A stretch of 64,000 nt of DNA from positions 124,001-188,000 of the IMG/VR virus record IMGVR_UViG_3300046787_000200; one strand, written 5' to 3'. The position numbers and the translations under genes are program-made. Positions within the stretch are counted from its first letter, which is position 1; the number at the start of each line of letters is the position of its first letter. The notes under the pieces are model-generated. The model made no database searches and was not told the origin of the DNA. It was given only the letters and a program-made list of their open reading frames with translations. This document shows positions 21,373 to 58,885 of this stretch, piece by piece.

Positions 21373-21475
21373 TACCCAAAATTGATAAATACTTAATACA
21401 TTCTCATTCGGAGAATTTATGCAGTAACCCACTGCGTAGCGGCTAGAACCCGCTAATTTTATAAAGGAAAAACAA

Positions 21476-22735
21476 ATGGGACGTCCTCTAAAAATAGCAA
21501 AGGCCCAAGCGGTCTTAACAGTAACTAACACTACTGCAACAACTAACGTTGTAACAGTATCTGAAGATTTATCAACTCTTGGCGTTATTGCCGGCATGCC
21601 ATTCGTACCAAGCGTAACGACAGGTACAAACTTGGTAGCAGGTACAACATATTGGATCTTAGCAGTTTTAAGTACTACAACTTTCACTGTTTCTGCAACT
21701 GATTTAAGTGCTAATACAACACGTACTGCAGTAACATTGACGACAGGTACAACTGCTTCTGCATTGACTGTTGGGTTTGTTGATGCATATTTCAACAACC
21801 CAGAAGGTGGTACTGGTTTCCCAACAACTAACGCTAATACATATGGTGTAGTTGGTGGTAATACAGCAATCTATGGTTCACAAGTTCTACCTCGTGTTGC
21901 TATCGGTGTTAATGGTACAGGTACATTGTATTCTGCTACTGATACTGAATTTGTAACAGGCATTGGTACTGATTTAGCAAACACATTGAGCGTAGGTTCA
22001 GTAATTCAAATCGCTAGTGCAAACGTTAATGGTACAACAACTGATTATACTACTCTAGGTTTTGCTAACACAGTTCCTGGATTAACAACAGTTGCTGTTG
22101 CTAACACACAAAATACAGGTAACATCATTGGTACTTCAGGTAATGCTGAAACATTGATTGCTAACGGTACAGTAAGATTTACTGCTAACTTAGGCGGTCT
22201 AGTTGCTGGTACAGTTTATTTCGTTAAGGCTATCGCAAATGCATCTGCATTCACTGTTTCTACAACATTGGGCGGTGCTGAAGTTGATTTGTCAAGTGCT
22301 ACTGGTACTCCAGACGCACAACAAGATGTAGTTGAATTGACAGCAAATGCGGCAGTGGCTGCATCAGGTTCTTCATTCATCTATGCAGATAATGAAGCAG
22401 GTTTCATCTTACGTCAAAAAGGTAAGCAGAAGTATCTAGTTCAAGGTGGTACAAGTGGTTTGATCGCACAATGCTATACTGCTAACTTGGCTAATACTGC
22501 ATTGACACCAAACACTATGAATATTGTTTCAACTGATGCGGCAACTGATGACACTTATGTTCAGTCATTAAGTGATTACGGTTCATTGACATTCAGTGCT
22601 ACTTCTGGTCCAGTTGCTACAGGTAACATTGTTCTTGCTAACGCTACTCCAGTTGTTGCTTCGTTCAACACTGCATATGCGGCAAATACATATGGTGGAC
22701 AGCCTTACCCAATCGTAACTATTGCTAACGCTTAA
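21476..22735 (+). CDS. Virion structural protein (T/A/G-rich, two copies of a shared beta-module)
   Basis: Late box at 21385, AAAGGA SD; GGLVAGTVYFVK...FTVSTTLGG module. Confidence 0.7.
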   Translation: MGRPLKIAKAQAVLTVTNTTATTNVVTVSEDLSTLGVIAGMPFVPSVTTGTNLVAGTTYWILAVLSTTTFTVSATDLSANTTRTAVTLTTGTTASALTVGFVDAYFNNPEGGTGFPTTNANTYGVVGGNTAIYGSQVLPRVAIGVNGTGTLYSATDTEFVTGIGTDLANTLSVGSVIQIASANVNGTTTDYTTLGFANTVPGLTTVAVANTQNTGNIIGTSGNAETLIANGTVRFTANLGGLVAGTVYFVKAIANASAFTVSTTLGGAEVDLSSATGTPDAQQDVVELTANAAVAASGSSFIYADNEAGFILRQKGKQKYLVQGGTSGLIAQCYTANLANTALTPNTMNIVSTDAATDDTYVQSLSDYGSLTFSATSGPVATGNIVLANATPVVASFNTAYAANTYGGQPYPIVTIANA

Positions 22736-24899: not shown

Positions 24900-26594
24900 T
24901 TAAGGTTGCGGGGGTATTGGATCTGGTGCAATAGTAAGTATTGTAGATAGACCTTGCTTCTGTTTAGTAGTTGTTCCGTCAGTCAATACTGTTACATTAC
25001 TGTTATTTATGAAGCTAGATTGCTGTGACAAATCTCCTGAAGTGAATCCAGTCTGCGTCCTTACATTCTCAGAGATTCTTATCCATAGTCTACCATCCCA
25101 ACGATATAGTATTTGAGGTAAGTAATCAATACGTAAGAAGTAATCACCTACTTGTGGGTTTTGCGGGAACGCAATACCTGCACCAGTTGGGAAGCCGTTA
25201 GGAGCAGTACCGTCACCATCCAAGTAACCAGTTGTGTAACCAAATGTGCGTGGACTACTACGTGCAATGAATTGGAATCTAGGATCACAGTCTGCTCTAA
25301 AGTCCATTACAGGAGTTATCTCGTCAGTAAATCCTGGTAGTTCTGGATTCTGGTCAGCAGTAGAATAGGTATTATCTGCAGTACCATATGGACCTGTAAT
25401 TAAACCTAAACTATCAATGGTTAGCATTGTGTCACCTGATACAGGACCTGATCCACCTGAAGTTAATTGCGGTGCAACTGTTAATGCTTTTAATGATAAT
25501 GTTGCTTTTGGTTCAACTGCGCCACCGTCAACTGTCATATTAAACATAGTTTTTACGGATGAAGCAGGTATTCGTAATACAGGACTAGGGTTTTTATACA
25601 ATGAAGATTGCATAAGTTCAACAGTAGCAACCGGTGCACCTGTGTTACCTGTTACTATATTAGTAGGTGGTGCAGGTTGATTATACTTGCCTGACAACTC
25701 TGTATTAGTTTCAAACGTGCCATATGTAGGTACAACATATAGATTATTTCTATCATAACCTGCTTTAGGAACAAGTCGTGCTGCCTCTTCCAATGCCGCA
25801 TTATTAATTTCAATATTTCTGTTATATGTAGACAGAATATCTTTAAGATTTGATGCCGTATCTAACTCCCAATATGTTGTATTCGGTGGCATAGTGCCAG
25901 CTGGTACTTCAATTTTACTAATGTAATTCTTGTCACCAAATGTAATAACATACCCTGCTGGATATACTTTTGTACTATCCCATACTCCTAGATAATTATC
26001 TTGGTTAATAGGCTCTGATAATATCTGACTATATTCTTCACTATCAACTAATGGTTCGCATTTAATACGCCACATATGTGGATACCAAGTTTGACTGAAA
26101 CCCTCACTTGAAAAATTAGCATCAGTTATACTATAAAATCTTTTTAGTGCAACTGGAATAGTTTCTTTTAATGGATTATAATCTAATAAGTGAGGTAATT
26201 CTAATACATCACCGACCATTAACTTGCGACCAACAATATCAATCATGTCATTATAATGAACATTAATAAAGATAATATCGTTGTTTAAAAATAATCCAAA
26301 TTGACTCAAATCAAAATCTAAATTCTGAACATTATAATGACCACGTAATCTATATACATTTGGATCATATGTTCTATCTCTATTTTCTAGGAATAATAAG
26401 TCCTGAATATTTAATGGACTCATCGTATCATATTCAGGTTGTGTATAATCTATACTGGCACCTTGATTAGTTGGACCTAAATATTTGTGAATGTATAAAT
26501 CCGTGCCGCCAACACGCAATTGCTCTGATATTGTTCTATCAAAGAATCGATAATCATTCTGTTTATTTGGGCGGTATAAGGATAACTTTGGCAT
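24900..26594 (-). CDS. Neck/head-closure protein (T4 gp14-like) with insertions
   Basis: FDLSQFGLF, GRKLMVGDVLELP; adjacent to the gp15-like gene. Confidence 0.6.
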   Translation of the reverse strand: MPKLSLYRPNKQNDYRFFDRTISEQLRVGGTDLYIHKYLGPTNQGASIDYTQPEYDTMSPLNIQDLLFLENRDRTYDPNVYRLRGHYNVQNLDFDLSQFGLFLNNDIIFINVHYNDMIDIVGRKLMVGDVLELPHLLDYNPLKETIPVALKRFYSITDANFSSEGFSQTWYPHMWRIKCEPLVDSEEYSQILSEPINQDNYLGVWDSTKVYPAGYVITFGDKNYISKIEVPAGTMPPNTTYWELDTASNLKDILSTYNRNIEINNAALEEAARLVPKAGYDRNNLYVVPTYGTFETNTELSGKYNQPAPPTNIVTGNTGAPVATVELMQSSLYKNPSPVLRIPASSVKTMFNMTVDGGAVEPKATLSLKALTVAPQLTSGGSGPVSGDTMLTIDSLGLITGPYGTADNTYSTADQNPELPGFTDEITPVMDFRADCDPRFQFIARSSPRTFGYTTGYLDGDGTAPNGFPTGAGIAFPQNPQVGDYFLRIDYLPQILYRWDGRLWIRISENVRTQTGFTSGDLSQQSSFINNSNVTVLTDGTTTKQKQGLSTILTIAPDPIPPQP

Positions 26595-26634
26595 AATAGT
26601 ATTTATCGTTATGCCCTATGCTTAAAACCTACGG

Positions 26635-26663
26635 TTGACAATAAATATGGGCTGTGTTATAAT
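26635..26663 (+). promoter_or_regulatory. Consensus sigma70 early promoter
   Basis: TTGACA-17nt-TATAAT with TG extension; AAAGGAG SD before ATG26691. Confidence 0.9.
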
Positions 26664-26690: not shown

Positions 26691-27848
26691 ATGGCAACAC
26701 GTAAACGTAATTCAGAGGACCATAGTCTAGTTAAAGCATTAAATCCACGGGATGCTGATGTTCAATATTACGGAGATGAACCTTTGTTCGTCTTACAACC
26801 AGATGAAGATAAGCGTAGATTAGCTCTAATGCGTAGTTTTACATGGTATAATCGTTTCTATGGCAAGAAAGATGCCAAAGAACTTATGTCCCAATTTCTG
26901 GATTTCAATAACAGAACCAGTGATGCAAAAATTATGCGTAAGATACATGAAAATGAATTCTTACTAACATTGTGCTGGTTGGCCCGTATGAAATTACGCG
27001 GTTTAGAATTAAGTGAACATGAAGAATTGACACTTGAAAAAGAGATCAGCCGACTGCTAAAGATTGTGCATAAGCCTGAGGAAATTAAAGTTGAAACTGA
27101 TGCCCCCGCAAGACCCAACATTCAGGATATTTTGCGTGATAAAGCAAAAGATGCCGCAGGGGAACTTGAAGGTATGTTTGATGAATTCATTCTGTACGGC
27201 AAAGCAAGCTCAAAAACAATGGACGTAGTTGCACGTTTCAATGTTATGCCACAACATATTGGGTTGATTGCTGATATTTGGAAGAAGAAACAGAATGAAT
27301 TTGATGAATTGCAAAAGGGCCTAGACAAGCAATTGACAGAAGGTTATAACCAACTGACAAAGATTCAAGTTCGTAATATTATTAAGTATATTGAAAATGT
27401 ACTAGCTGACTTGAATGCGTACATTTCAGTTAAGAAAGCAAGTAAAGCACCTCGTCAACGTAAAGCAGTACCTGTTGAAAAGATTGTAGCTAAACTTAAG
27501 TATCTTAAAACATTCAAAGATACTCCCAACAAGCTTGACTTGATATCTATCAGTCCTGTAAAATTGCATGGTGCAAGTGAAGCGTGGGTCTATGACACTG
27601 CAAAGCGTAAATTACATCACTATATTGCTGATGATTACTCAAAGGCATTTACGGTGAAAGGTAACACTATTCTTGGATTTGATACGAACAAGTCAGAGAT
27701 TAAGACACTACGTAAACCGGGTGAGCAAATCAAAGAAGTCATGGGTTCAAAGCCCGCGGCACGTAAATTCTTTGATGGAATTAAAGCAGTTGCAACTACT
27801 CCTAATGGTAGGTTCAACGAACACATGATTATTTTGAAAGCATTTTAA
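26691..27848 (+). CDS. Early hypothetical protein
   Basis: 385 aa basic ORF with strong promoter and SD. Confidence 0.75.
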   Translation: MATRKRNSEDHSLVKALNPRDADVQYYGDEPLFVLQPDEDKRRLALMRSFTWYNRFYGKKDAKELMSQFLDFNNRTSDAKIMRKIHENEFLLTLCWLARMKLRGLELSEHEELTLEKEISRLLKIVHKPEEIKVETDAPARPNIQDILRDKAKDAAGELEGMFDEFILYGKASSKTMDVVARFNVMPQHIGLIADIWKKKQNEFDELQKGLDKQLTEGYNQLTKIQVRNIIKYIENVLADLNAYISVKKASKAPRQRKAVPVEKIVAKLKYLKTFKDTPNKLDLISISPVKLHGASEAWVYDTAKRKLHHYIADDYSKAFTVKGNTILGFDTNKSEIKTLRKPGEQIKEVMGSKPAARKFFDGIKAVATTPNGRFNEHMIILKAF

Positions 27849-28267
27849 TGAGTAATATTGATTTAAACAAATACAAAGATTTTGTAGAAGCTGTAACCAG
27901 CAAAGCAAGTAATGACTTGACTACGTTTATGAACCGTTGTGATGAACTTGACGGTAACGATGGAGGACCTAGTATCAATGTTCCTTTGTTACTTACAGCT
28001 TGTCTTGGATTAGCGGCTGAAGGTGGTGAATTCATCGAAGTGCCCAAGAAAATCTTTTTTCAAGGTAAGCCACTAACTGATGCTCAAGTCTTTCACTTGA
28101 AGCGTGAACTTGGTGATGTTATGTGGTATTGGATCAATGCATGCCGAGCATTGAATCTTGACCCAAATGAAGTGATTGACGAGAACGTTCGCAAGTTAGA
28201 AAGTCGCTATCCCGGTGGAAGTTTTGACGCACATTATAGTGAGAATCGCAAAGAAGGCGATATCTAA
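27848..28267 (+). CDS. mazG: MazG-like NTP pyrophosphohydrolase
   Basis: LGLAAEGGEFIE...KK...ELGDVMWY...ENVRKLESRY. Confidence 0.88.
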   Translation: MSNIDLNKYKDFVEAVTSKASNDLTTFMNRCDELDGNDGGPSINVPLLLTACLGLAAEGGEFIEVPKKIFFQGKPLTDAQVFHLKRELGDVMWYWINACRALNLDPNEVIDENVRKLESRYPGGSFDAHYSENRKEGDI

Positions 28268-28274
28268 CGACCAA

Positions 28275-28307
28275 TAGTTTCCTGATAAATACAGTATCAG
28301 GAAACTA
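28275..28307 (+). promoter_or_regulatory. Late promoter embedded in an SD-sequestering hairpin
   Basis: Perfect 13-bp stem TAGTTTCCTGATA/TATCAGGAAACTA; GATAAATA at the apex, AGGA in the 3' arm. Confidence 0.8.
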
Positions 28308-28309
28308 AC

Positions 28310-29107
28310 ATGACTATATCCGCAACAGCAAACATTCTTTCTACCCCATCTGGATTAACACTAGATGAGTTGAAACAAGCATTATTTCAAAACCTTCGTT
28401 ATCGTTTAGGTGACGGAATCATTGACCTTGAATTAGATCCACAACACTTTGAAGCGGCTTACAACTATGCCATTAAAGTATATCGTCAACGTGCTCAAAA
28501 TGCTACGGCTGAATCATATACATTAATGACTATTGTAAAGAATGTTGATACATATACACTTCCGCAAGAGTTTATTAATGTTCGTTGTCTATATCGTAGA
28601 ACGATTGGATTAGAAACAGGCCCATCAAGCACTAGCTTTGATCCGTTCAGTTCAGCTATTCTAAACACTTATTTGCTAAACTACAACTATGCAGGTGGTA
28701 TGGCAACATATGACTTCTATGCAGGTTATGTTGAATTAGCCGCACGTATGTTCGGTGGCTATGTTATCTATACATTTGATCCAGTCACAAAAGTTATTCG
28801 TATCGTGCGTGACCCGAAGGGTTCAGGTGAACATGTTCTTATTTGGGCTGATGTACAAAGACCTGAAGAAGTGATATTACAAGACCCGGGTGCTGGTGTA
28901 TGGATCGGTGACTTTATATTAGCTAATCTTAAGTTAATCATTGGTGAAGCACGTGAGAAGTTTGGTTCTATCGCAGGACCAGGTGGCGGCACAACATTAA
29001 ACGGAACAGCCATGAAAGCTGAAGGTAAGGCTGCAATGGAACAATTAATTGACGAATTGAAACGATATGTAGATTACAGTCAACCACTAACTTGGGTGCA
29101 AGGTTAA
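28310..29107 (+). CDS. Neck protein (T4 gp13-like)
   Basis: LRYRLGDGIIDLELDPQHFEAAYNYAI; LIIGEAREKF...GGGTTLNG. Confidence 0.8.
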   Translation: MTISATANILSTPSGLTLDELKQALFQNLRYRLGDGIIDLELDPQHFEAAYNYAIKVYRQRAQNATAESYTLMTIVKNVDTYTLPQEFINVRCLYRRTIGLETGPSSTSFDPFSSAILNTYLLNYNYAGGMATYDFYAGYVELAARMFGGYVIYTFDPVTKVIRIVRDPKGSGEHVLIWADVQRPEEVILQDPGAGVWIGDFILANLKLIIGEAREKFGSIAGPGGGTTLNGTAMKAEGKAAMEQLIDELKRYVDYSQPLTWVQG

Positions 29108-29116
29108 AATAATCTC

Positions 29117-29145
29117 TTTACTTTACAAGACTCCTGTAGTATAAT
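29117..29145 (+). promoter_or_regulatory. Sigma70-type promoter inside a terminator-like hairpin
   Basis: TTTACT-17nt-TATAAT; stem ACTCCTGTAGTA/TACTACGGGAGT followed by T6. Confidence 0.65.
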
Positions 29146-29165
29146 AAGTACTACGGGAGTTTTTT

Positions 29166-29798
29166 ATGATTATTGGAGTAACAGGATTGATCGGTAGCGG
29201 CAAAGACACTATTGCTGACTATCTTTGTACATTTCACGGATTTAAAAGAATGAGTTTTGCATCCTCATTAAAAGATGCAGTAGCTAGTGTATTTGGTTGG
29301 AATAGAGAGTACCTTGAAGGTTCTACTAAAGCTAGCAGAGCATGGAGAGAACAGAAAGACGAGTGGTGGAGTAATCGTTTAGGTATGGAGATCACACCTA
29401 GATGGGTATTGCAATACTGGGGAACCGAAGTATGTCGTAATGGATTTCACAATGACATTTGGGTTGCTAGTGTCGAAAACAAACTACGTCAAACTGATGA
29501 AAACATTGTAATTACTGATTGTAGATTCGCTAATGAAATTAAATCTATCAAGGAAATAGGTGGAATTACTATGCGAGTTACTAGAGGTCAGCCACCAGAC
29601 TGGTACGATGCCGCAGTATCTTATAACAAAGGTGAGCATGGTAACATGAGTTGGTCTTTGAGTAAAGCTAAACTAGATAGAAATAGAGTTCATGCAAGTG
29701 AATATTCCAGCGTCGGTTTGGACTACGATCATTATATTGATAACAACGGCACGATTGATGATTTACACAAGCAAGTCAATTTAGTGATCAACTTCTAA
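29166..29798 (+). CDS. Deoxynucleoside monophosphate kinase (T4 gp1-like)
   Basis: GLIGSGKDT P-loop, SFASSLKD, TPRWVLQYWGTE, ITDCRF. Confidence 0.9.
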   Translation: MIIGVTGLIGSGKDTIADYLCTFHGFKRMSFASSLKDAVASVFGWNREYLEGSTKASRAWREQKDEWWSNRLGMEITPRWVLQYWGTEVCRNGFHNDIWVASVENKLRQTDENIVITDCRFANEIKSIKEIGGITMRVTRGQPPDWYDAAVSYNKGEHGNMSWSLSKAKLDRNRVHASEYSSVGLDYDHYIDNNGTIDDLHKQVNLVINF

Positions 29799-30128: not shown

Positions 30129-30244
30129 GCAGTATTTATAGCCTTCGAAGGCACGGTTATTGGCTCTTTTTATAAGTATTCGATAAATAATAATATGCAA
30201 TTTAGGTAGTAAACCTCATAATTTTACATAAAGGAAAAAATAAA

Positions 30245-33200
30245 ATGGCATTAACCTCACCAGGCGTAGAAGTAACGATTACAGATGAAAGTCAATACTT
30301 ACCAGCCCCAACAAATTCAGTCCCACTAGTTCTATTAGCAACTGCACAAAATAAAGCAAATGCTAGTGGTACAGGTGTAGCAGTGGCAACAACCGCAGCC
30401 AACGCTAATAAATTATATCAAGTAACAAGTCAACGTGATTTAGTAAATTTATATGGTACACCGTTCTTCTACACAACGACCAATGGTACGCCAATTCAAG
30501 GTTACGAATTAAATGAATACGGTTTATTAGCGGCTTATAGCTTGCTAGGTGTTACAAATCGTTGTTATGTATTACGTGCAGATATTGACCTAGCAAGTTT
30601 AGTAGGTCAAACAGGTCGTCCAACTGGTGCACCAACTGACGGTACATACTGGTTAGATAGTACTACTACAACTTGGGGTATCTACGAGTTCAATGCTACT
30701 ACTGGTCAATTCTCATTACAGAATCCTATCGTAATTACTGATGCAGCCGATATGTCAGCCGGATTCCCATTAGCAAGTATTGGTAGTATTGGTGATTATG
30801 CAGTTAACGCAATAGAAGTAACAACCGACGCTACAAATGCTGATAGAACATATTATTATAAGACAACTGACAATGCATGGGCTATCTTAGGTGGTTCAGC
30901 ATGGAAAGCAGATGTTCCTGCAGTAATTTCAAGCTTGTCTAATCCAGACGTTGCCGCTGGCACAATGATTATTAGCTTGTCAGGTTCTGTATCTGTAACA
31001 CTAACTATCGGTGGTAGTGATACAGTAGGTGACGTTGCAACTGCAATTAATGGTTTAGGTTGGGATTATCTAGCAGCCGAAGTTCGTAGTGGTAAATTAT
31101 GTTTATTCACACGCCAACGTTTAACTACAGGTAGTGCGAACGCTTATATTGGTTTGAGTGGTACATCATTGACTTCTATGGGTCTAACTGCAGGTGATTA
31201 TTATACACCAACTGTATCATATGGTACAAGTGCGCAGATGCCATTATGGACAGCAAGTCAAACAACTCCTCGTCCAACAGGATCTGTTTGGATTAAAGTC
31301 GGTGCTGCCGGTACTGGATTAGCTCCAGTAATGTCACAATATAGTACTGCTACAGCATCATGGATATCAAAATCAGTTGCATTAGCAACAAGTGATTGGG
31401 CAGTTACTTCAACATTAGATTCAACAGGCGGTCAAGCTATCCCTGCAGGATCAATATATGGACAATATTATTATAACGGTACTAGCACAACTGCTCCGGT
31501 ATACTTCTGGGAAAGACTAGCTACAGGTGCTACAGTAGTAACAGGTGATAATACAACACCAGATTTCGCATCAGGTCCATATTACATGAACGTATATGTG
31601 TCAGTTCCCGGTAGTTCATCACTAAGTTCTGCATATAATTTCACATTAGCAGGTAGTAGTAATGCTACTGATTTCGTTACCGCATGGTATGCGGCAGGTA
31701 TTCCTTACACGACCGCAGTTGTAACTACAGACGGTGCAATTCAAGTGACTCATACTGAGGGTGGCGAAATTATCATGGACGATACTGTAAATTCATCATT
31801 TGCAGGAACAGGTATTTCTAATGGTCTAATAGTTGAAGCAGGTTTTACATCTGGTACAACTACAGGTGCTAAGTACGGTCCTACTGTAAGTGCTACGTTT
31901 TCAGGTGTTGCGCAAGCAGGAACACAAACAGGAACATCAGGTTCAGGTGCTACATTTAATATAGAATCTATCTATAACATCTACATTCCTGTAGGTGACG
32001 GTGTTCAAGCCGGTGGTAGTGGTTATGCGGTAGGTGATACAATCACAATCGCAGGTACAGTGTTAGGTGGATCATCTCCTGCAAACGATTTAGAAGTTGT
32101 AGTAACTGCAGTATCTGCTGGTGCATTGTCAGCAGTAACATTTGTTTCAGGTGAACCTGAAGCACAGTATAGAACTCAATTAAGTAACTGGGTAGAATTC
32201 ACCTATACTGCTAATGAAGGTGCTCCTAGTGAAGCCCCTGCTAATAATACAAACTGGTTCTATAGTGTTGTTGACCAAGTTGATATTATGGTTCAAAAAG
32301 CTGGTGCCTGGATTGGTTATAAAAACACAGCATATGATTCAACAGGTGCTCCAGTTGCGGCTTCAGGCGCAGGCGCTACAGATCCAAATGGTCCTATAAT
32401 AAGTGCTACTGCACCTACAACTCAAAGTGACGGTACTGCATTGGTATACGGTGACTTGTGGATTGACACAAGCAACTTAGAAGTATATCCAGTAATCAGC
32501 CGTTGGGAAAGCGTTGATGGAGAAAATACATGGGTATTAATTAACAATGCAGACCAGGTAAGTAGCACTGGTGCATTATTTGCCGATGCTCGTTGGGCAA
32601 CAAGTGGTAACGTAAGTCCAGTTGATGATCCTATACCAACTATCGTTAGTTTGCTAACAAGCAACTACTTAGATTTAGATGCTCCTGATCCAAGTCTATA
32701 TCCACAAGGTATGTTGTTGTTTAACACACGCCGTAGTGGTTATAACGTTAAGCAATTCCGTGTTAATTATTTTAACAATACTAACTTCCCAGGTGAAACA
32801 CTGCCTGCACAAACTGATGCATGGGTGACAGTAAGTGGTAATTCTTCTAACGGTGCACCATATATGGGTCGTGCGGCACAACGTGCTATGGTTGTACAAG
32901 CATTGCGTTCAGCAATCGATACAAACACCGACATACGTGATGAAGATAATTACTTCAATTTAATGGCTACACCTAACTATCCAGAACTACAGCCTAACAT
33001 GGTTGTGTTGAATGCAGATCGTGGTGAGACAGGCTATATTATCGGTGATACTCCATTAGGATTAGCTGATAGTGCTACTGACATTCAAGCTTGGGCTAAC
33101 AACGATGCAGGTGCTACAAGCACAGGTGAAACTGGTTTAGTTACACGTAATACTTACTTGGGTCTATTCTATCCAAGCGGAATTACAAATGACTTGTCAG

Positions 33201-33805
33201 GCAATGAAGTTGTTGTTCCAGCATCACATATGATGTTACGCACATTCTTACGTAACGACACAGTGGCTTATCCTTGGTTAGCGGCAGCAGGTACTCGTCG
33301 TGGTAACATTGACAATGCATTGAACATTGGTTACTTAGATCGTCAGACTGGCGAATTCCAAGCAATTAAGACACGTTTAGGAATACGTGATGTATTGTAT
33401 ATTAATCAAATCAATCCATTAGTATTCTTTACTGGTGTTGGTTTGTTGAACTATGGTAACAAAAACAGTTTCAATTCACAAAGCGCATTAGATAGAACTA
33501 ACGTTGCACGTTTAGTTAACTATATCCGTCGTCAATTGACATTGGCAGCAAGACCGTTCGTATTTGAACCTAACGATGCATTAACACGTAATAGTATTGC
33601 AGGCGTAATTCAAACATTGATGGTTGACTTAGTTGCTAAACGTGGTCTCTATGATTATCTTGTAGTTTGTGATGAGTCAAACAACACACCGGCAAGAATT
33701 GATAGAAATGAATTGTGGGTAGACGTTGCAATTGAGCCTGTTAAGGCAGCTGAATTCATCTACATCCCGGTTCGTGTTTTAAACACAGGTGAATTATCAC
33801 AGTAA
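30245..33805 (+). CDS. Contractile tail sheath protein (T4 gp18-like)
   Basis: SPGVEV N-terminus; WLAAAGTRRG, DESNNTPARIDRNELWVDVAIEPVKAAEFI C-terminus. Confidence 0.95.
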   Translation: MALTSPGVEVTITDESQYLPAPTNSVPLVLLATAQNKANASGTGVAVATTAANANKLYQVTSQRDLVNLYGTPFFYTTTNGTPIQGYELNEYGLLAAYSLLGVTNRCYVLRADIDLASLVGQTGRPTGAPTDGTYWLDSTTTTWGIYEFNATTGQFSLQNPIVITDAADMSAGFPLASIGSIGDYAVNAIEVTTDATNADRTYYYKTTDNAWAILGGSAWKADVPAVISSLSNPDVAAGTMIISLSGSVSVTLTIGGSDTVGDVATAINGLGWDYLAAEVRSGKLCLFTRQRLTTGSANAYIGLSGTSLTSMGLTAGDYYTPTVSYGTSAQMPLWTASQTTPRPTGSVWIKVGAAGTGLAPVMSQYSTATASWISKSVALATSDWAVTSTLDSTGGQAIPAGSIYGQYYYNGTSTTAPVYFWERLATGATVVTGDNTTPDFASGPYYMNVYVSVPGSSSLSSAYNFTLAGSSNATDFVTAWYAAGIPYTTAVVTTDGAIQVTHTEGGEIIMDDTVNSSFAGTGISNGLIVEAGFTSGTTTGAKYGPTVSATFSGVAQAGTQTGTSGSGATFNIESIYNIYIPVGDGVQAGGSGYAVGDTITIAGTVLGGSSPANDLEVVVTAVSAGALSAVTFVSGEPEAQYRTQLSNWVEFTYTANEGAPSEAPANNTNWFYSVVDQVDIMVQKAGAWIGYKNTAYDSTGAPVAASGAGATDPNGPIISATAPTTQSDGTALVYGDLWIDTSNLEVYPVISRWESVDGENTWVLINNADQVSSTGALFADARWATSGNVSPVDDPIPTIVSLLTSNYLDLDAPDPSLYPQGMLLFNTRRSGYNVKQFRVNYFNNTNFPGETLPAQTDAWVTVSGNSSNGAPYMGRAAQRAMVVQALRSAIDTNTDIRDEDNYFNLMATPNYPELQPNMVVLNADRGETGYIIGDTPLGLADSATDIQAWANNDAGATSTGETGLVTRNTYLGLFYPSGITNDLSGNEVVVPASHMMLRTFLRNDTVAYPWLAAAGTRRGNIDNALNIGYLDRQTGEFQAIKTRLGIRDVLYINQINPLVFFTGVGLLNYGNKNSFNSQSALDRTNVARLVNYIRRQLTLAARPFVFEPNDALTRNSIAGVIQTLMVDLVAKRGLYDYLVVCDESNNTPARIDRNELWVDVAIEPVKAAEFIYIPVRVLNTGELSQ

Positions 33806-35732: not shown

Positions 35733-35761
35733 ATGTATAAATACTCTTAGGAGATTTATAC

Positions 35762-36124
35762 ATGGCTAGAATACTTGATTCCCGCTCACAACTAGATTCA
35801 ACAGTAAGAATATTTGATGACTTTTATGCATTTGACTTAGTAGTCAACGGTAATGAGTATGACATTGTTCACGGCTATTTTGTGTCAGTATGTGAAACTA
35901 GACAAATAGCAGATAATTTTACTGTGAATTTGTTTAGAATATCACAACAAACACAAATTCCTGTATTAGACTTACTAAACTATATTAGAGGTCTTAACAA
36001 TAAATTAGAAATGAATACTGTTATAACATACTATCTTAACAGTTTTAAAAGTAAAACATCATTATATGGTATAGGTAAAGTACCTCAACCAAATCAGAAT
36101 GTAGCTAGAAACATTGTATTATAA
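35762..36124 (+). CDS. Hypothetical late protein
   Basis: TATAAATA box and AGGAG SD. Confidence 0.7.
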   Translation: MARILDSRSQLDSTVRIFDDFYAFDLVVNGNEYDIVHGYFVSVCETRQIADNFTVNLFRISQQTQIPVLDLLNYIRGLNNKLEMNTVITYYLNSFKSKTSLYGIGKVPQPNQNVARNIVL

Positions 36125-58685: not shown

Positions 58686-58720
58686 AATGATAAATACTCT
58701 AATAAAATGGAGTATTTACC

Positions 58721-58885
58721 ATGGCAAGGATTGTCGAAGACGTAATCGTCATCAAATTTAGTAAAATCGTAAAAGATAGCGAAGAAGGTTCTTCTGTCGC
58801 TACTTCCGACGTTCAGGCAGCATTAGAACAAGTTGCACAAGAATTAGTCGGTGATGCAGTAGTTGTTGAGGTTGTAAAAGCATGA
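58721..58885 (+). CDS. Small 54 aa late protein (absent from the ORF track)
   Basis: MARIVEDVIVIKFSKIVKD...VEVVKA; late box, GGAG SD, ATGA overlap with the next gene. Confidence 0.75.
   Translation: MARIVEDVIVIKFSKIVKDSEEGSSVATSDVQAALEQVAQELVGDAVVVEVVKA

What the first reader, a model, noticed from the sequence alone, without database searches (positions are those of the whole stretch)
28275..28312. Late promoter at the apex of a perfect 13-bp hairpin hiding the neck gene SD
Seen: TAGTTTCCTGATA-aatacag-TATCAGGAAACTA, with GATAAATA (28284-28291) across the apex and AGGA in the 3' arm. It sits at the junction between an early sigma70 operon (26635 promoter to mazG) and a late gene. Established: T4 genes e, soc, 49 and I-TevI are silenced on early read-through RNA this way, while late transcripts lack the 5' arm. 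Inference: a built-in early/late translational switch.
Basis: partly seen in the sequence, partly recalled or inferred. Interest (0 to 1): 0.62.

Follow-up and report, generated by a model that had tools for sequence, protein, structure and literature searches.

The report
Late-promoter hairpin masking neck-gene ribosome site
A conserved RNA hairpin in an uncultured freshwater jumbo phage probably keeps a neck (head-tail connector) gene untranslated on early read-through messages and lets it be translated only from a late promoter inside the hairpin; phage T4 uses the same trick for its lysozyme gene.

Summary
A perfect 13-bp stem lies at 28275-28287 and 28295-28307, with a 7-nt loop. GATAAATA (28284-28291) spans the top and the AGGA ribosome site (28299-28302) sits in the 3' arm, 7 nt before the ATG at 28310. 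It is far from chance: dG -17.5 kcal/mol, z -4.9, and 0.025 such hairpins expected per shuffled window.

The interpretation passed every test I could run:
- GATAAATA is this phage's late-promoter core: it is enriched, sits just before structural genes, and the genome encodes a gp55-like sigma factor.
- A conserved class of leaderless genes places the transcript start about 6 nt after the motif, inside the 3' arm.
- A consensus early promoter at 26635 drives an unknown gene plus MazG into the hairpin with no terminator.
- In 48 distinct relatives the stem is kept by compensatory changes (9 of 14 pairs; 0 of 500 shuffles). G.U pairs mark the sense strand.
- Opening the ribosome site costs 14.9 kcal/mol on long RNA and 1.1 on the late transcript, matching the T4 lysozyme-gene control.

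The start site and the repression were not measured.

This is a new member of a known T4 mechanism. A mirror-image sigma70-type module guards the next gene, dNMP kinase.

The parts
26635..26663 (+). Early sigma70-type promoter (TTGACA-17-TATAAT with TG), of the phage's early-promoter family TTGACAATAAAT..TG.TATAAT
   Evidence: 12/12 match. Roughly 30 genomic promoters share the extended consensus (my count from the list). An 11-12/12 promoter is conserved 1.25-1.9 kb upstream of the neck promoter in relatives.
26691..27848 (+). 385-aa gene of unknown function, first gene of the early unit
   Evidence: phrog_11903, unknown function. 36% identical to PA5oct gp292, which also lies directly upstream of that phage's neck gene.
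27848..28267 (+). MazG-like nucleotide pyrophosphohydrolase gene; its stop codon lies 7 nt before the stem
   Evidence: Pfam PF03819 E 5e-8; phrog_229 E 2e-44.
28275..28287 (+). 5' arm of the hairpin (anti-SD TCCT at 28280-28283); present only on RNA started upstream
   Evidence: covaries with the 3' arm in relatives.
28284..28291 (+). Late-promoter core GATAAATA (gp55-type -10 element)
   Evidence: Enriched 15 against 6.07 expected. Positioned before structural genes genome-wide. Invariant in 48 relatives.
28288..28294 (+). Loop of the hairpin
28295..28307 (+). 3' arm of the hairpin, containing the Shine-Dalgarno AGGA (28299-28302)
   Evidence: SD unpaired probability at or below 0.001 in long RNA.
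28296..28298 (+). Predicted late transcription start (5th-7th nt after the motif); inferred, not measured
   Evidence: Leaderless class: 12 genes have their ATG 4-6 nt after GATAAATA and none have it at 7-15 nt. The spacing is conserved while the sequence varies in relatives.
28310..29107 (+). Neck / head-tail adaptor (Ad2, T4 gp13-like) gene, 265 aa
   Evidence: phrog_211 E 9e-22; relatives are annotated as neck proteins, and the PA5oct record carries an ESI-MS/MS note.
29117..29145 (+). Sigma70-type promoter TTTACT-17-TATAAT for the dNMP kinase gene; the -10 box lies at the top of the next hairpin
   Evidence: the -35 and -10 boxes are conserved in 33 relatives.
29127..29163 (+). 16-bp hairpin plus T-run: likely terminator of the unit that contains the neck gene. 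Its 3' arm holds the dNMP kinase SD (GGGAG, 29155-29159).
   Evidence: 13 consensus pairs, 5 with compensatory changes. Ribosome-site opening cost 17.3 on long RNA against 1.5 kcal/mol on short RNA. Rank 1 of 70 sigma70-like promoters.
29166..29798 (+). dNMP kinase gene
   Evidence: Pfam PF21448; phrog_139 E 1e-49.
30182..30189 (+). Next late promoter GATAAATA, before the tail sheath gene (30245-33805)

Best explanation
The element is a transcript-dependent translational switch of the T4 gene e / soc / 49 / I-TevI kind.

Early in infection, host sigma70 RNA polymerase starts at the consensus promoter at 26635. It transcribes the 385-aa gene and mazG, then reads on through the neck gene to the hairpin plus T-run at 29127-29163. 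On this long RNA the 13-bp stem forms, and TCCT (28280-28283) pairs with the neck gene's AGGA ribosome site, so ribosomes cannot load and no neck protein is made.

Late in infection, polymerase carrying the phage's gp55-like sigma factor recognises GATAAATA (28284-28291) at the top of the hairpin. It starts about 6 nt downstream, near 28296-28298. That RNA lacks the whole 5' arm, so the ribosome site sits open on a leader of about 13 nt and the neck protein is made.

Shown here: the structure, its conservation by covariation on the sense strand, the promoter motifs and their genome-wide behaviour, and the energetics. Inferred: the actual start site, the read-through transcripts, and the size of the translational effect.
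For: Structure: -17.5 kcal/mol, z = -4.9. It is kept in a 201-nt context, and the short RNA is open.

Energetics: opening positions -13 to +3 of the ribosome site costs 14.9 kcal/mol on long RNA and 1.1 on RNA starting at 28295-28298. The experimentally validated T4 gene e gives 17.2 against 1.9-4.3 with the same script. PMC3014915 reports 100-fold repression there.

Late promoter: GATAAATA is enriched, and 39 of 51 copies precede ORFs. TATAAATA is not enriched. A gp55-like sigma factor is present (phrog_12791 E 2e-73). The same motif was reported for relatives.

Start site: a leaderless gene class has the ATG 4-6 nt after the motif, and this is conserved in relatives.

Early unit: a 12/12 promoter belongs to a large phage promoter family. 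It is conserved in relatives, with no terminator before the hairpin.

Selection on pairing: across 48 distinct upstream sequences, 85% of cells are paired against 27-53% when the structure is slid. Nine of 14 pairs have double changes, and the covariation score is 0.246 against 0.03-0.05, with 0 of 500 shuffles reaching it. Inside the stem there are 29 G.U pairs against 4 A.C pairs, which indicates the sense-strand RNA.

Context dependence: relatives in which a roughly 400-nt ORF-free element separates the neck promoter from upstream genes have a much weaker hairpin. Median opening cost is 6.7 against 15.0 kcal/mol.

Recurrence: the neck site ranks 2nd of 46 late promoters. A second site at genome position 276099 has the same design, conserved in relatives whose protein is only 43-77% identical.
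Against: - No transcript 5' ends or expression data exist for this uncultured phage. The only RNA libraries holding relatives are assembled contigs.
- The early class of the 385-aa gene and mazG rests on promoter sequence alone. The 385-aa gene is syntenic with the neck gene in PA5oct, so it could be a morphogenesis gene.
- Only the SD is masked. The AUG itself is mostly unpaired.
- Cultured distant relatives (PA5oct, 121Q, Atu_ph07) lack the hairpin.
- Some other strong hairpin sites in this genome follow late genes (baseplate, tube), so the design is not used only at early/late junctions.
- The relatives are not phylogenetically independent, so counts overstate the number of events.
Confidence: 0.77

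Rival explanations
1. Translational coupling device. The hairpin masks the neck ribosome site until a ribosome finishing mazG melts the stem, so neck synthesis is tied to mazG translation rather than silenced.
For: The mazG stop codon (28265-28267) lies only 7 nt before the stem. In relatives with mazG upstream, the stop is 4-10 nt from the stem base.
Against: - A terminating ribosome reaches roughly 12-13 nt past the A-site codon (established ribosome footprint knowledge). It would open only about 3 outer pairs and leave the TCCT/AGGA pairing intact.
- The hairpin is equally kept behind four unrelated upstream genes with different stop distances.
- Coupling would not explain an invariant promoter motif at the top of the stem.
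Confidence: 0.07
2. RNA end or processing element. The stem acts as an attenuator or weak terminator, an RNase target, or a 3' stabiliser for the early mazG message; overlap with the ribosome site is incidental.
For: - One relative (L071) has the stem followed by a T-run.
- The neighbouring dNMP kinase hairpin does look like a terminator.
- Several promoter-overlapping hairpins in the genome have T-runs.
Against: - There is no T-run here or in most relatives, and the scan does not call it a terminator.
- The stem is AT-rich and 13 bp long, shorter than typical RNase III substrates.
- The 3' arm always contains the SD, and the stem always ends 2-6 nt before the ATG across covarying variants. 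A pure end-element would not require this.
Confidence: 0.08
3. DNA-level palindrome: an operator for a dimeric regulator of the late promoter, or a cruciform or non-template-strand hairpin that helps promoter opening.
For: It is a perfect inverted repeat centred on a promoter. T4 I-TevI does repress its late promoter through an overlapping operator (PMC2988022).
Against: - The half-sites are not conserved in sequence; they covary freely (TAGTTTCC/GGAAACTA, GTGTTACC/GGTAACAC, AAAACTCC/GGAGTTTT).
- G.U pairs outnumber A.C pairs 29 to 4 inside the stem, so the complementary strand could not form the same structure.
- About 40 other GATAAATA promoters lack any palindrome.
Confidence: 0.04
4. Chance inverted repeat with no function.
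For: None beyond the AT-rich composition.
Against: Expected 0.025 per shuffled window; conserved with compensatory changes in relatives.
Confidence: 0.01

Closest known systems
T4 gene e (lysozyme) leader hairpin with internal late promoters
   Same: An anti-SD stretch lies just upstream of a TATAAATA-type late promoter, the promoter is in or at the loop, and the SD is in the 3' arm. The late gene lies downstream of earlier genes on the same strand. The cost to open the ribosome site is the same with my metric: 17.2 against 1.9-4.3 for T4 e, and 14.9 against 1.1 here. The mechanism is described in PMC3014915.
   Different: A different phage lineage (Rak2/PA5oct-like jumbo phage, neck protein 35-40% identical to cultured relatives). 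The promoter core is GATAAATA rather than TATAAATA, there is one promoter instead of two, and the target is a neck protein rather than a lysis enzyme. No experiments exist.
T4 soc, gene 49, I-TevI/II/III, segB and Aeh1 mobE ribosome-site-sequestering hairpins
   Same: Late genes embedded in early or middle polycistronic units. The structure forms only on upstream-initiated RNA, and the late promoter is placed so that late RNA lacks the 5' strand (PMC2988022).
   Different: Most of those are homing endonucleases or accessory genes. Here the target is a core structural gene, and the pairing is documented by covariation across dozens of natural variants.
PeSL composite promoter-terminator motifs of T4-like phages
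   Same: A promoter is combined with a stem-loop in a compact intergenic module. The PST/T4 PeSL consensus TTTACW-N17-TAYWAT (PMC4122927) matches the dNMP kinase promoter TTTACT-17-TATAAT next door.
   Different: The neck hairpin carries a late promoter, not an early one, has no T-run, and is unique in the genome. PeSLs were described as terminator/promoter recombination modules, and the word 'ribosome' does not occur in that paper.

Membership tests
T4-type late-promoter / ribosome-site-sequestering hairpin switch (e, soc, 49, I-TevI) | A stable stem-loop pairs the Shine-Dalgarno site and/or the AUG of the regulated gene | tested here: met
   -17.5 kcal/mol; SD unpaired probability at or below 0.001 in 201-nt RNA; the AUG itself is mostly free.
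T4-type late-promoter / ribosome-site-sequestering hairpin switch (e, soc, 49, I-TevI) | A gp55-type late promoter lies inside the structure, so that late transcripts lack the 5' strand | tested here: met
   GATAAATA at 28284-28291 is validated genome-wide as the late motif. The start site is inferred at 28296-28298 from the leaderless-gene spacing. The motif position is met; the start site itself was not measured.
T4-type late-promoter / ribosome-site-sequestering hairpin switch (e, soc, 49, I-TevI) | The phage encodes the late sigma factor (gp55 homologue) | tested here: met
   301-aa ORF at about G000:18026-18931 (-): phrog_12791 E 2e-73, phrog_234 E 9e-22, and a T4 gp55 hit at E 2e-5.
T4-type late-promoter / ribosome-site-sequestering hairpin switch (e, soc, 49, I-TevI) | The gene lies on the same strand downstream of early or middle genes and is reached by their transcripts | tested here: inconclusive
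   A consensus early-family promoter at 26635 and no terminator-like site up to 29127. This is sequence prediction only; no RNA data can show read-through.
T4-type late-promoter / ribosome-site-sequestering hairpin switch (e, soc, 49, I-TevI) | Translation is repressed on long RNA and active on late RNA | not testable with these tools
   Only thermodynamic estimates are possible: 14.9 against 1.1 kcal/mol, equal to the T4 e control.
T4-type late-promoter / ribosome-site-sequestering hairpin switch (e, soc, 49, I-TevI) | The pairing is conserved in related phages | tested here: met
   48 distinct sequences, 9 of 14 pairs with compensatory changes, 0 of 500 shuffles reaching the observed score.
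Intrinsic (rho-independent) terminator | A GC-rich stem followed by a U-run | tested here: not met
   Not called by the scan. The stem is followed by ACATGAC and has 4 G-C pairs of 13.
PeSL (promoter-early stem-loop) cassette | A sigma70 early promoter joined to a terminator stem-loop, present in many similar copies | tested here: not met
   The promoter is of the late type, there is no T-run, and the element is single-copy in the genome.
Protein-bound DNA palindrome (operator) | Conserved half-site sequence, with symmetry valid on both strands | tested here: not met
   Half-sites covary rather than being conserved; G.U pairs outnumber A.C pairs 29 to 4.

The most novel reading that the evidence does not exclude
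The neck hairpin may be one half of a two-way temporal insulation grammar.

At this locus early and late genes are interleaved on one strand: early 385-aa gene and mazG, late neck, sigma70-driven dNMP kinase, late sheath. Each boundary carries its incoming gene's promoter at the top of a hairpin whose 3' arm holds that gene's ribosome site. The late gene would therefore be untranslatable on early read-through RNA. Reciprocally, the sigma70-driven gene would be untranslatable on late read-through RNA.

The reciprocal half is not part of the T4 cases I read about here. It would let a jumbo phage mix temporal classes without relying on terminators.
Probability: 0.4. Interest if true: 0.6.

Novelty: new member of a known kind. 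Interest (0 to 1): 0.5.

Why it matters
It shows that the T4 device for silencing late genes on early messages also operates, under clear natural selection, in a distant and uncultured clade of freshwater jumbo phages. There it acts on a core structural gene.

Dozens of natural stem variants amount to a ready-made mutational series (breaking and compensating changes) for a mechanism that in T4 rests on a few laboratory constructs. For annotators, the result gives three practical rules for this phage group:
- GATAAATA marks late promoters.
- The transcript starts about 6 nt downstream of the motif, and many late genes are leaderless.
- Promoter-in-hairpin modules mark boundaries between temporal classes.

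Tried and rejected
- Megablast of the locus against cultured phages found no match, so close cultured relatives were not available.
- TATAAATA, the T4 consensus, is not enriched (4 copies against 11.8 expected); the G-first variant is the real motif.
- Sequence searches of the 385-aa and neck proteins against solved structures gave nothing useful.
- Rfam has no family for the hairpin or for the ORF-free element in relatives.
- Sequencing runs: 20 runs hold the stretch, but all are kept as contigs. One metatranscriptome holds relatives over the whole stretch and has a 198-nt contig beginning at 28304. Contig ends say nothing about RNA ends, so I draw no start-site inference.
- Cultured distant relatives (Atu_ph07, PA5oct, 121Q) have an ATAAATA/TAAATA-like motif before the neck gene but no hairpin. 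Vibrio phage 2.275.O has only a weak long-range TTTCTC/GGAGAAA pairing.
- The PA5oct paper reports no late motif, leaderless genes or hairpins, and its supplements are not held.
- Full-text searches for GATAAATA and for 'freshwater-2' were uninformative.
- Rejected readings: chance, repeat family, intrinsic terminator, RNase III site and DNA operator (see the rival explanations and membership tests).

Full report
**What the window is.** The window is bases 124001-188000 of a 352,012-bp single-contig virus genome, with 34-39% G+C. Its structural genes place it in the Rak2 / 121Q / PA5oct / Atu_ph07 supergroup of jumbo myophages. The neck protein is 35-40% identical to theirs, and there are T4-like gp15, sheath and tube genes. 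No cultured phage is close at the DNA level. The DNA recurs in freshwater and estuary metagenomes, and IMG/VR holds 420 contigs encoding a relative of the neck protein.

**The observation.** Read directly, the sequence is TAGTTTCCTGATA (28275-28287), AATACAG (28288-28294), TATCAGGAAACTA (28295-28307), AC, then ATG (28310).
- GATAAATA occupies 28284-28291 and AGGA occupies 28299-28302.
- As RNA the element folds at -17.5 kcal/mol (z = -4.93) and keeps its shape within 201 nt of context.
- Perfect stems of at least 13 bp are expected 0.025 times per shuffled window.
- The whole genome has four such stems, and the 38-mer is single-copy.

The only correction is that the hairpin ends at 28307.

**Is GATAAATA a late promoter here?** The T4 consensus TATAAATA is not enriched (4 copies against 11.8 expected). 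GATAAATA is enriched: 15 against 6.07, and 0 of 100 shuffles reach 15.
- Genome-wide, 39 of 51 copies are followed within 60 nt by an ATG-started ORF of at least 50 aa on the same strand.
- These ORFs include sheath, tube, neck, a 564-aa virion protein, a baseplate wedge subunit and other structural genes.
- The genome encodes a 301-aa homologue of the T4 late sigma factor gp55 (phrog_12791 E 2e-73).
- For the related jumbo phages CBB and GAP32, an ATAAATA motif before structural genes and a gp55-like sigma factor have been reported (PMC5259590).

**Where would late transcripts start?** The distance from the motif to the ATG is bimodal. It is 4-6 nt in 12 genes, 16-28 nt in 23 genes (these carry an SD), and never 7-15 nt.
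- The short class can only be leaderless mRNA.
- For the 564-aa virion protein gene next door (start 26594, minus strand), the 4-6-nt spacing is conserved in relatives while the spacer sequence varies.
- This places the start 5-7 nt after the motif, as at T4 late promoters (my knowledge of T4). Here that is 28296-28298, inside the 3' arm, so late RNA lacks the 5' arm entirely.

**Is the upstream unit early, and does it read through?**
- The promoter at 26635-26663 is a 12/12 sigma70 consensus with an extended -10.
- It belongs to a family of roughly 30 near-identical phage promoters (my count from the list) sharing TTGACAATAAAT..TG.TATAAT. These cluster in regions of small genes.
- The AATAAATA at 26640 is part of that consensus, not a late promoter.
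- On the plus strand there is no other ATAAATA between 26641 and 28285.
- There is no terminator-like site before 29127.
- In relatives with the same gene order, the strong promoter is conserved 1.25-1.9 kb upstream, again with no terminator.
- The first terminator-like structure is the 16-bp stem plus T-run at 29127-29163, after the neck gene.

By sequence, therefore, the neck gene lies inside a sigma70 transcription unit.

**Long against short RNA.** The free energy needed to open positions -13 to +3 around the start codon is 14.9 kcal/mol on an RNA beginning 70 nt upstream. It is 0.9-1.1 kcal/mol on RNA beginning at 28295-28298.
- In the long RNA the SD bases are unpaired with probability at or below 0.001. 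The AUG itself is mostly free.
- The same script on T4 gene e gives 17.2 against 4.3 and 1.9 for its two late promoters. For that gene a 100-fold effect has been measured (PMC3014915).
- Among 46 late-promoter/gene pairs in this genome, the neck site ranks second. Six sites exceed 9 kcal/mol and the rest are below 6.2.

**Comparative evidence.** I examined 80 relatives (85-98% identical neck protein), which give 48 distinct upstream sequences.
- All but about five fold into the same hairpin, with GATAAATA at the top and the SD in the 3' arm.
- The outer stem changes freely but in step: TAGTTTCC/GGAAACTA, GTGTTACC/GGTAACAC, TGATTACC/GGTAATCA, AAAACTCC/GGAGTTTT, and CCAGATA/TATCTGG in place of CCTGATA/TATCAGG.
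- On the alignment, 85% of cells pair, against 27-53% when the 3' partners are slid by 1-3 columns.
- Nine of 14 pairs show changes on both sides. The covariation score is 0.246, against 0.03-0.05 when slid and 0.126 when shuffled, with 0 of 500 shuffles reaching it.
- Inside the stem, G.U pairs outnumber A.C pairs 29 to 4. The structure therefore works on the sense strand, as RNA, and not as a symmetric DNA site.
- The motif columns are invariant.
- The 5' arm is not part of a general promoter consensus, because other GATAAATA promoters have unrelated upstream sequence.

Selection for a sense-strand RNA helix whose 5' half lies upstream of the only nearby promoter implies that upstream-initiated RNA exists and matters.

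**A natural control.** The hairpin persists behind four different upstream genes: mazG, the 385-aa gene, a small ORF and a roughly 320-aa ORF. In a sub-clade, a conserved ORF-free element of about 400 nt lies between the upstream genes and the neck promoter. There the hairpin is much weaker.
- Median opening cost is 6.7 against 15.0 kcal/mol.
- Median long-minus-short difference is 4.75 against 13.8 kcal/mol (40 against 46 distinct sequences).

This fits a structure that is needed only when a translated upstream message runs straight into the neck leader. The groups are related lineages, so this is suggestive rather than proof.

**The neighbourhood uses the same design.**
- Directly after the neck gene, a sigma70-type promoter (TTTACT-17-TATAAT, 29117-29145) has its -10 box at the top of a 16-bp hairpin (29127-29163). 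The 3' arm of that hairpin carries the dNMP kinase SD.
- It is conserved in 33 relatives, with 5 of 13 pairs covarying and many G.U pairs. In many of them it lacks a T-run.
- It gives 17.3 against 1.5 kcal/mol and ranks first of 70 sigma70-like promoter/gene pairs.
- A second late-promoter hairpin, at genome position 276099 before a 373-aa ORF, is conserved in relatives only 43-77% identical.

The neck hairpin is therefore one instance of a recurrent promoter-in-hairpin design. At this locus the design brackets a late gene set between sigma70-driven genes.

**Rivals.**
- Translational coupling to mazG is unlikely. A terminating ribosome would melt only the outer about 3 pairs, and the hairpin is kept behind unrelated genes.
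- A terminator or processing role is not excluded as a side function. However, the element lacks a T-run, and such a role does not explain why the SD is always in the stem.
- A DNA operator is contradicted by the covariation and by the strand asymmetry.
- Chance is excluded.

**Comparison with what is known.** The anatomy and predicted energetics match the T4 cases e, soc, 49 and I-TevI (PMC3014915, PMC2988022).
- All membership features testable by sequence are met.
- Read-through is predicted but not shown, and repression is untestable here.
- It is not a PeSL, a terminator or an operator.
- Cultured members of the supergroup lack the hairpin, and the PA5oct transcriptome paper does not mention such structures.

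I file this as a new member of a known kind. It is of moderate interest, raised somewhat by the unusually rich natural covariation and by the possible reciprocal module.

**Limits.** There are no RNA ends, no expression timing and no host. The temporal class of the upstream unit is inferred from its promoter. The relatives are not independent samples.

Noticed in passing
window 29117-29166: Mirror-image module: a sigma70-type promoter (TTTACT-17-TATAAT) has its -10 box at the top of a 16-bp hairpin plus T-run, and the 3' arm of that hairpin holds the dNMP kinase SD. It is conserved with covariation in 33 relatives, many of them without the T-run. Ribosome-site opening cost is 17.3 against 1.5 kcal/mol, the strongest of 70 sigma70-like promoters in the genome.
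   Followed up: yes
window 26592-26607 (minus strand) and 11 other sites in the genome, e.g. window 53043 and 6630: A class of apparently leaderless late genes. The ATG lies 4-6 nt after GATAAATA in 12 genes and never at 7-15 nt. For the 564-aa virion protein the spacing is conserved in relatives while the spacer sequence varies.
   Followed up: partly
L029, L047, L057, L080 and L172-L251 (relatives); about 150-450 nt upstream of their neck genes: A conserved ORF-free element of about 400 nt. It contains the exact word GACATAGACAATCCTCC, which occurs in 84 IMG/VR contigs; 63 of the 80 examined have the neck gene just downstream. Several helices show clear compensatory changes (for example GC 27 / AU 25 at one pair), and there is no Rfam match. 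It is a candidate new structured RNA, or an intron-like element that Rfam missed. It is absent from the window's genome. Where it is present, the neck hairpin is weak.
   Followed up: partly
window 21400-21478 (+): The Rfam orphan motif RF02980 'freshwater-2 RNA' scores 71 bits against a gathering score of 49.9. It lies directly after a GATAAATA late promoter (21384-21391) and runs into the start of a 419-aa ORF with no family match. This places the motif in the 5' leader of a late jumbo-phage gene.
   Followed up: partly
G000:C1:276085-276126 (outside the window); relatives L090-L169: A second late-promoter hairpin, TTTAGTCCTATTCTGATAAATACAGAATAAGGACTAAAAATG, lies before a 373-aa ORF. It has the largest long-minus-short opening cost in the genome (15.6 kcal/mol). 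It is conserved with covariation in relatives only 43-77% identical.
   Followed up: yes
window 35733-35763 and 58689-58723: Two more sites where the ribosome site or ATG pairs with the promoter region. At the first, TATAAATA is in the 5' arm and the ATG of a 120-aa ORF is in the 3' arm, after the tube-like gene. At the second, AAATACTC of the promoter pairs with GGAGTATTT. Both follow late genes, so the design is not restricted to early/late junctions.
   Followed up: no
window 26635 and 54842; about 30 further sites across G000: A family of near-identical strong early promoters with the extended consensus TTGACAATAAAT(N7)TG(N)TATAAT, often followed by A(c/g)ttgtattga or agaatcttagacag. They are clustered at 87-90, 117-118, 221-260 and 283-316 kb of the genome.
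   Followed up: partly
G000:C1 about 30.4-49.3 kb (outside the window): A single open frame of about 6,291 codons follows the baseplate wedge gene. It is presumably a giant fibre or structural protein; not examined.
   Followed up: no
G000:C1 positions 135 and 351953: The same GATAAATA context appears at both ends of the contig. This indicates a terminal overlap of roughly 200 bp, that is, a circularly closed assembly or a terminal repeat.
   Followed up: no
L084 (Vibrio phage 2.275.O) 1419-1491: In this distant cultured relative, TTTCTC just upstream of a TATAAATA pairs at long range with the neck gene's GGAGAAA. This is a weak echo of the same arrangement, and it may be chance.
   Followed up: no
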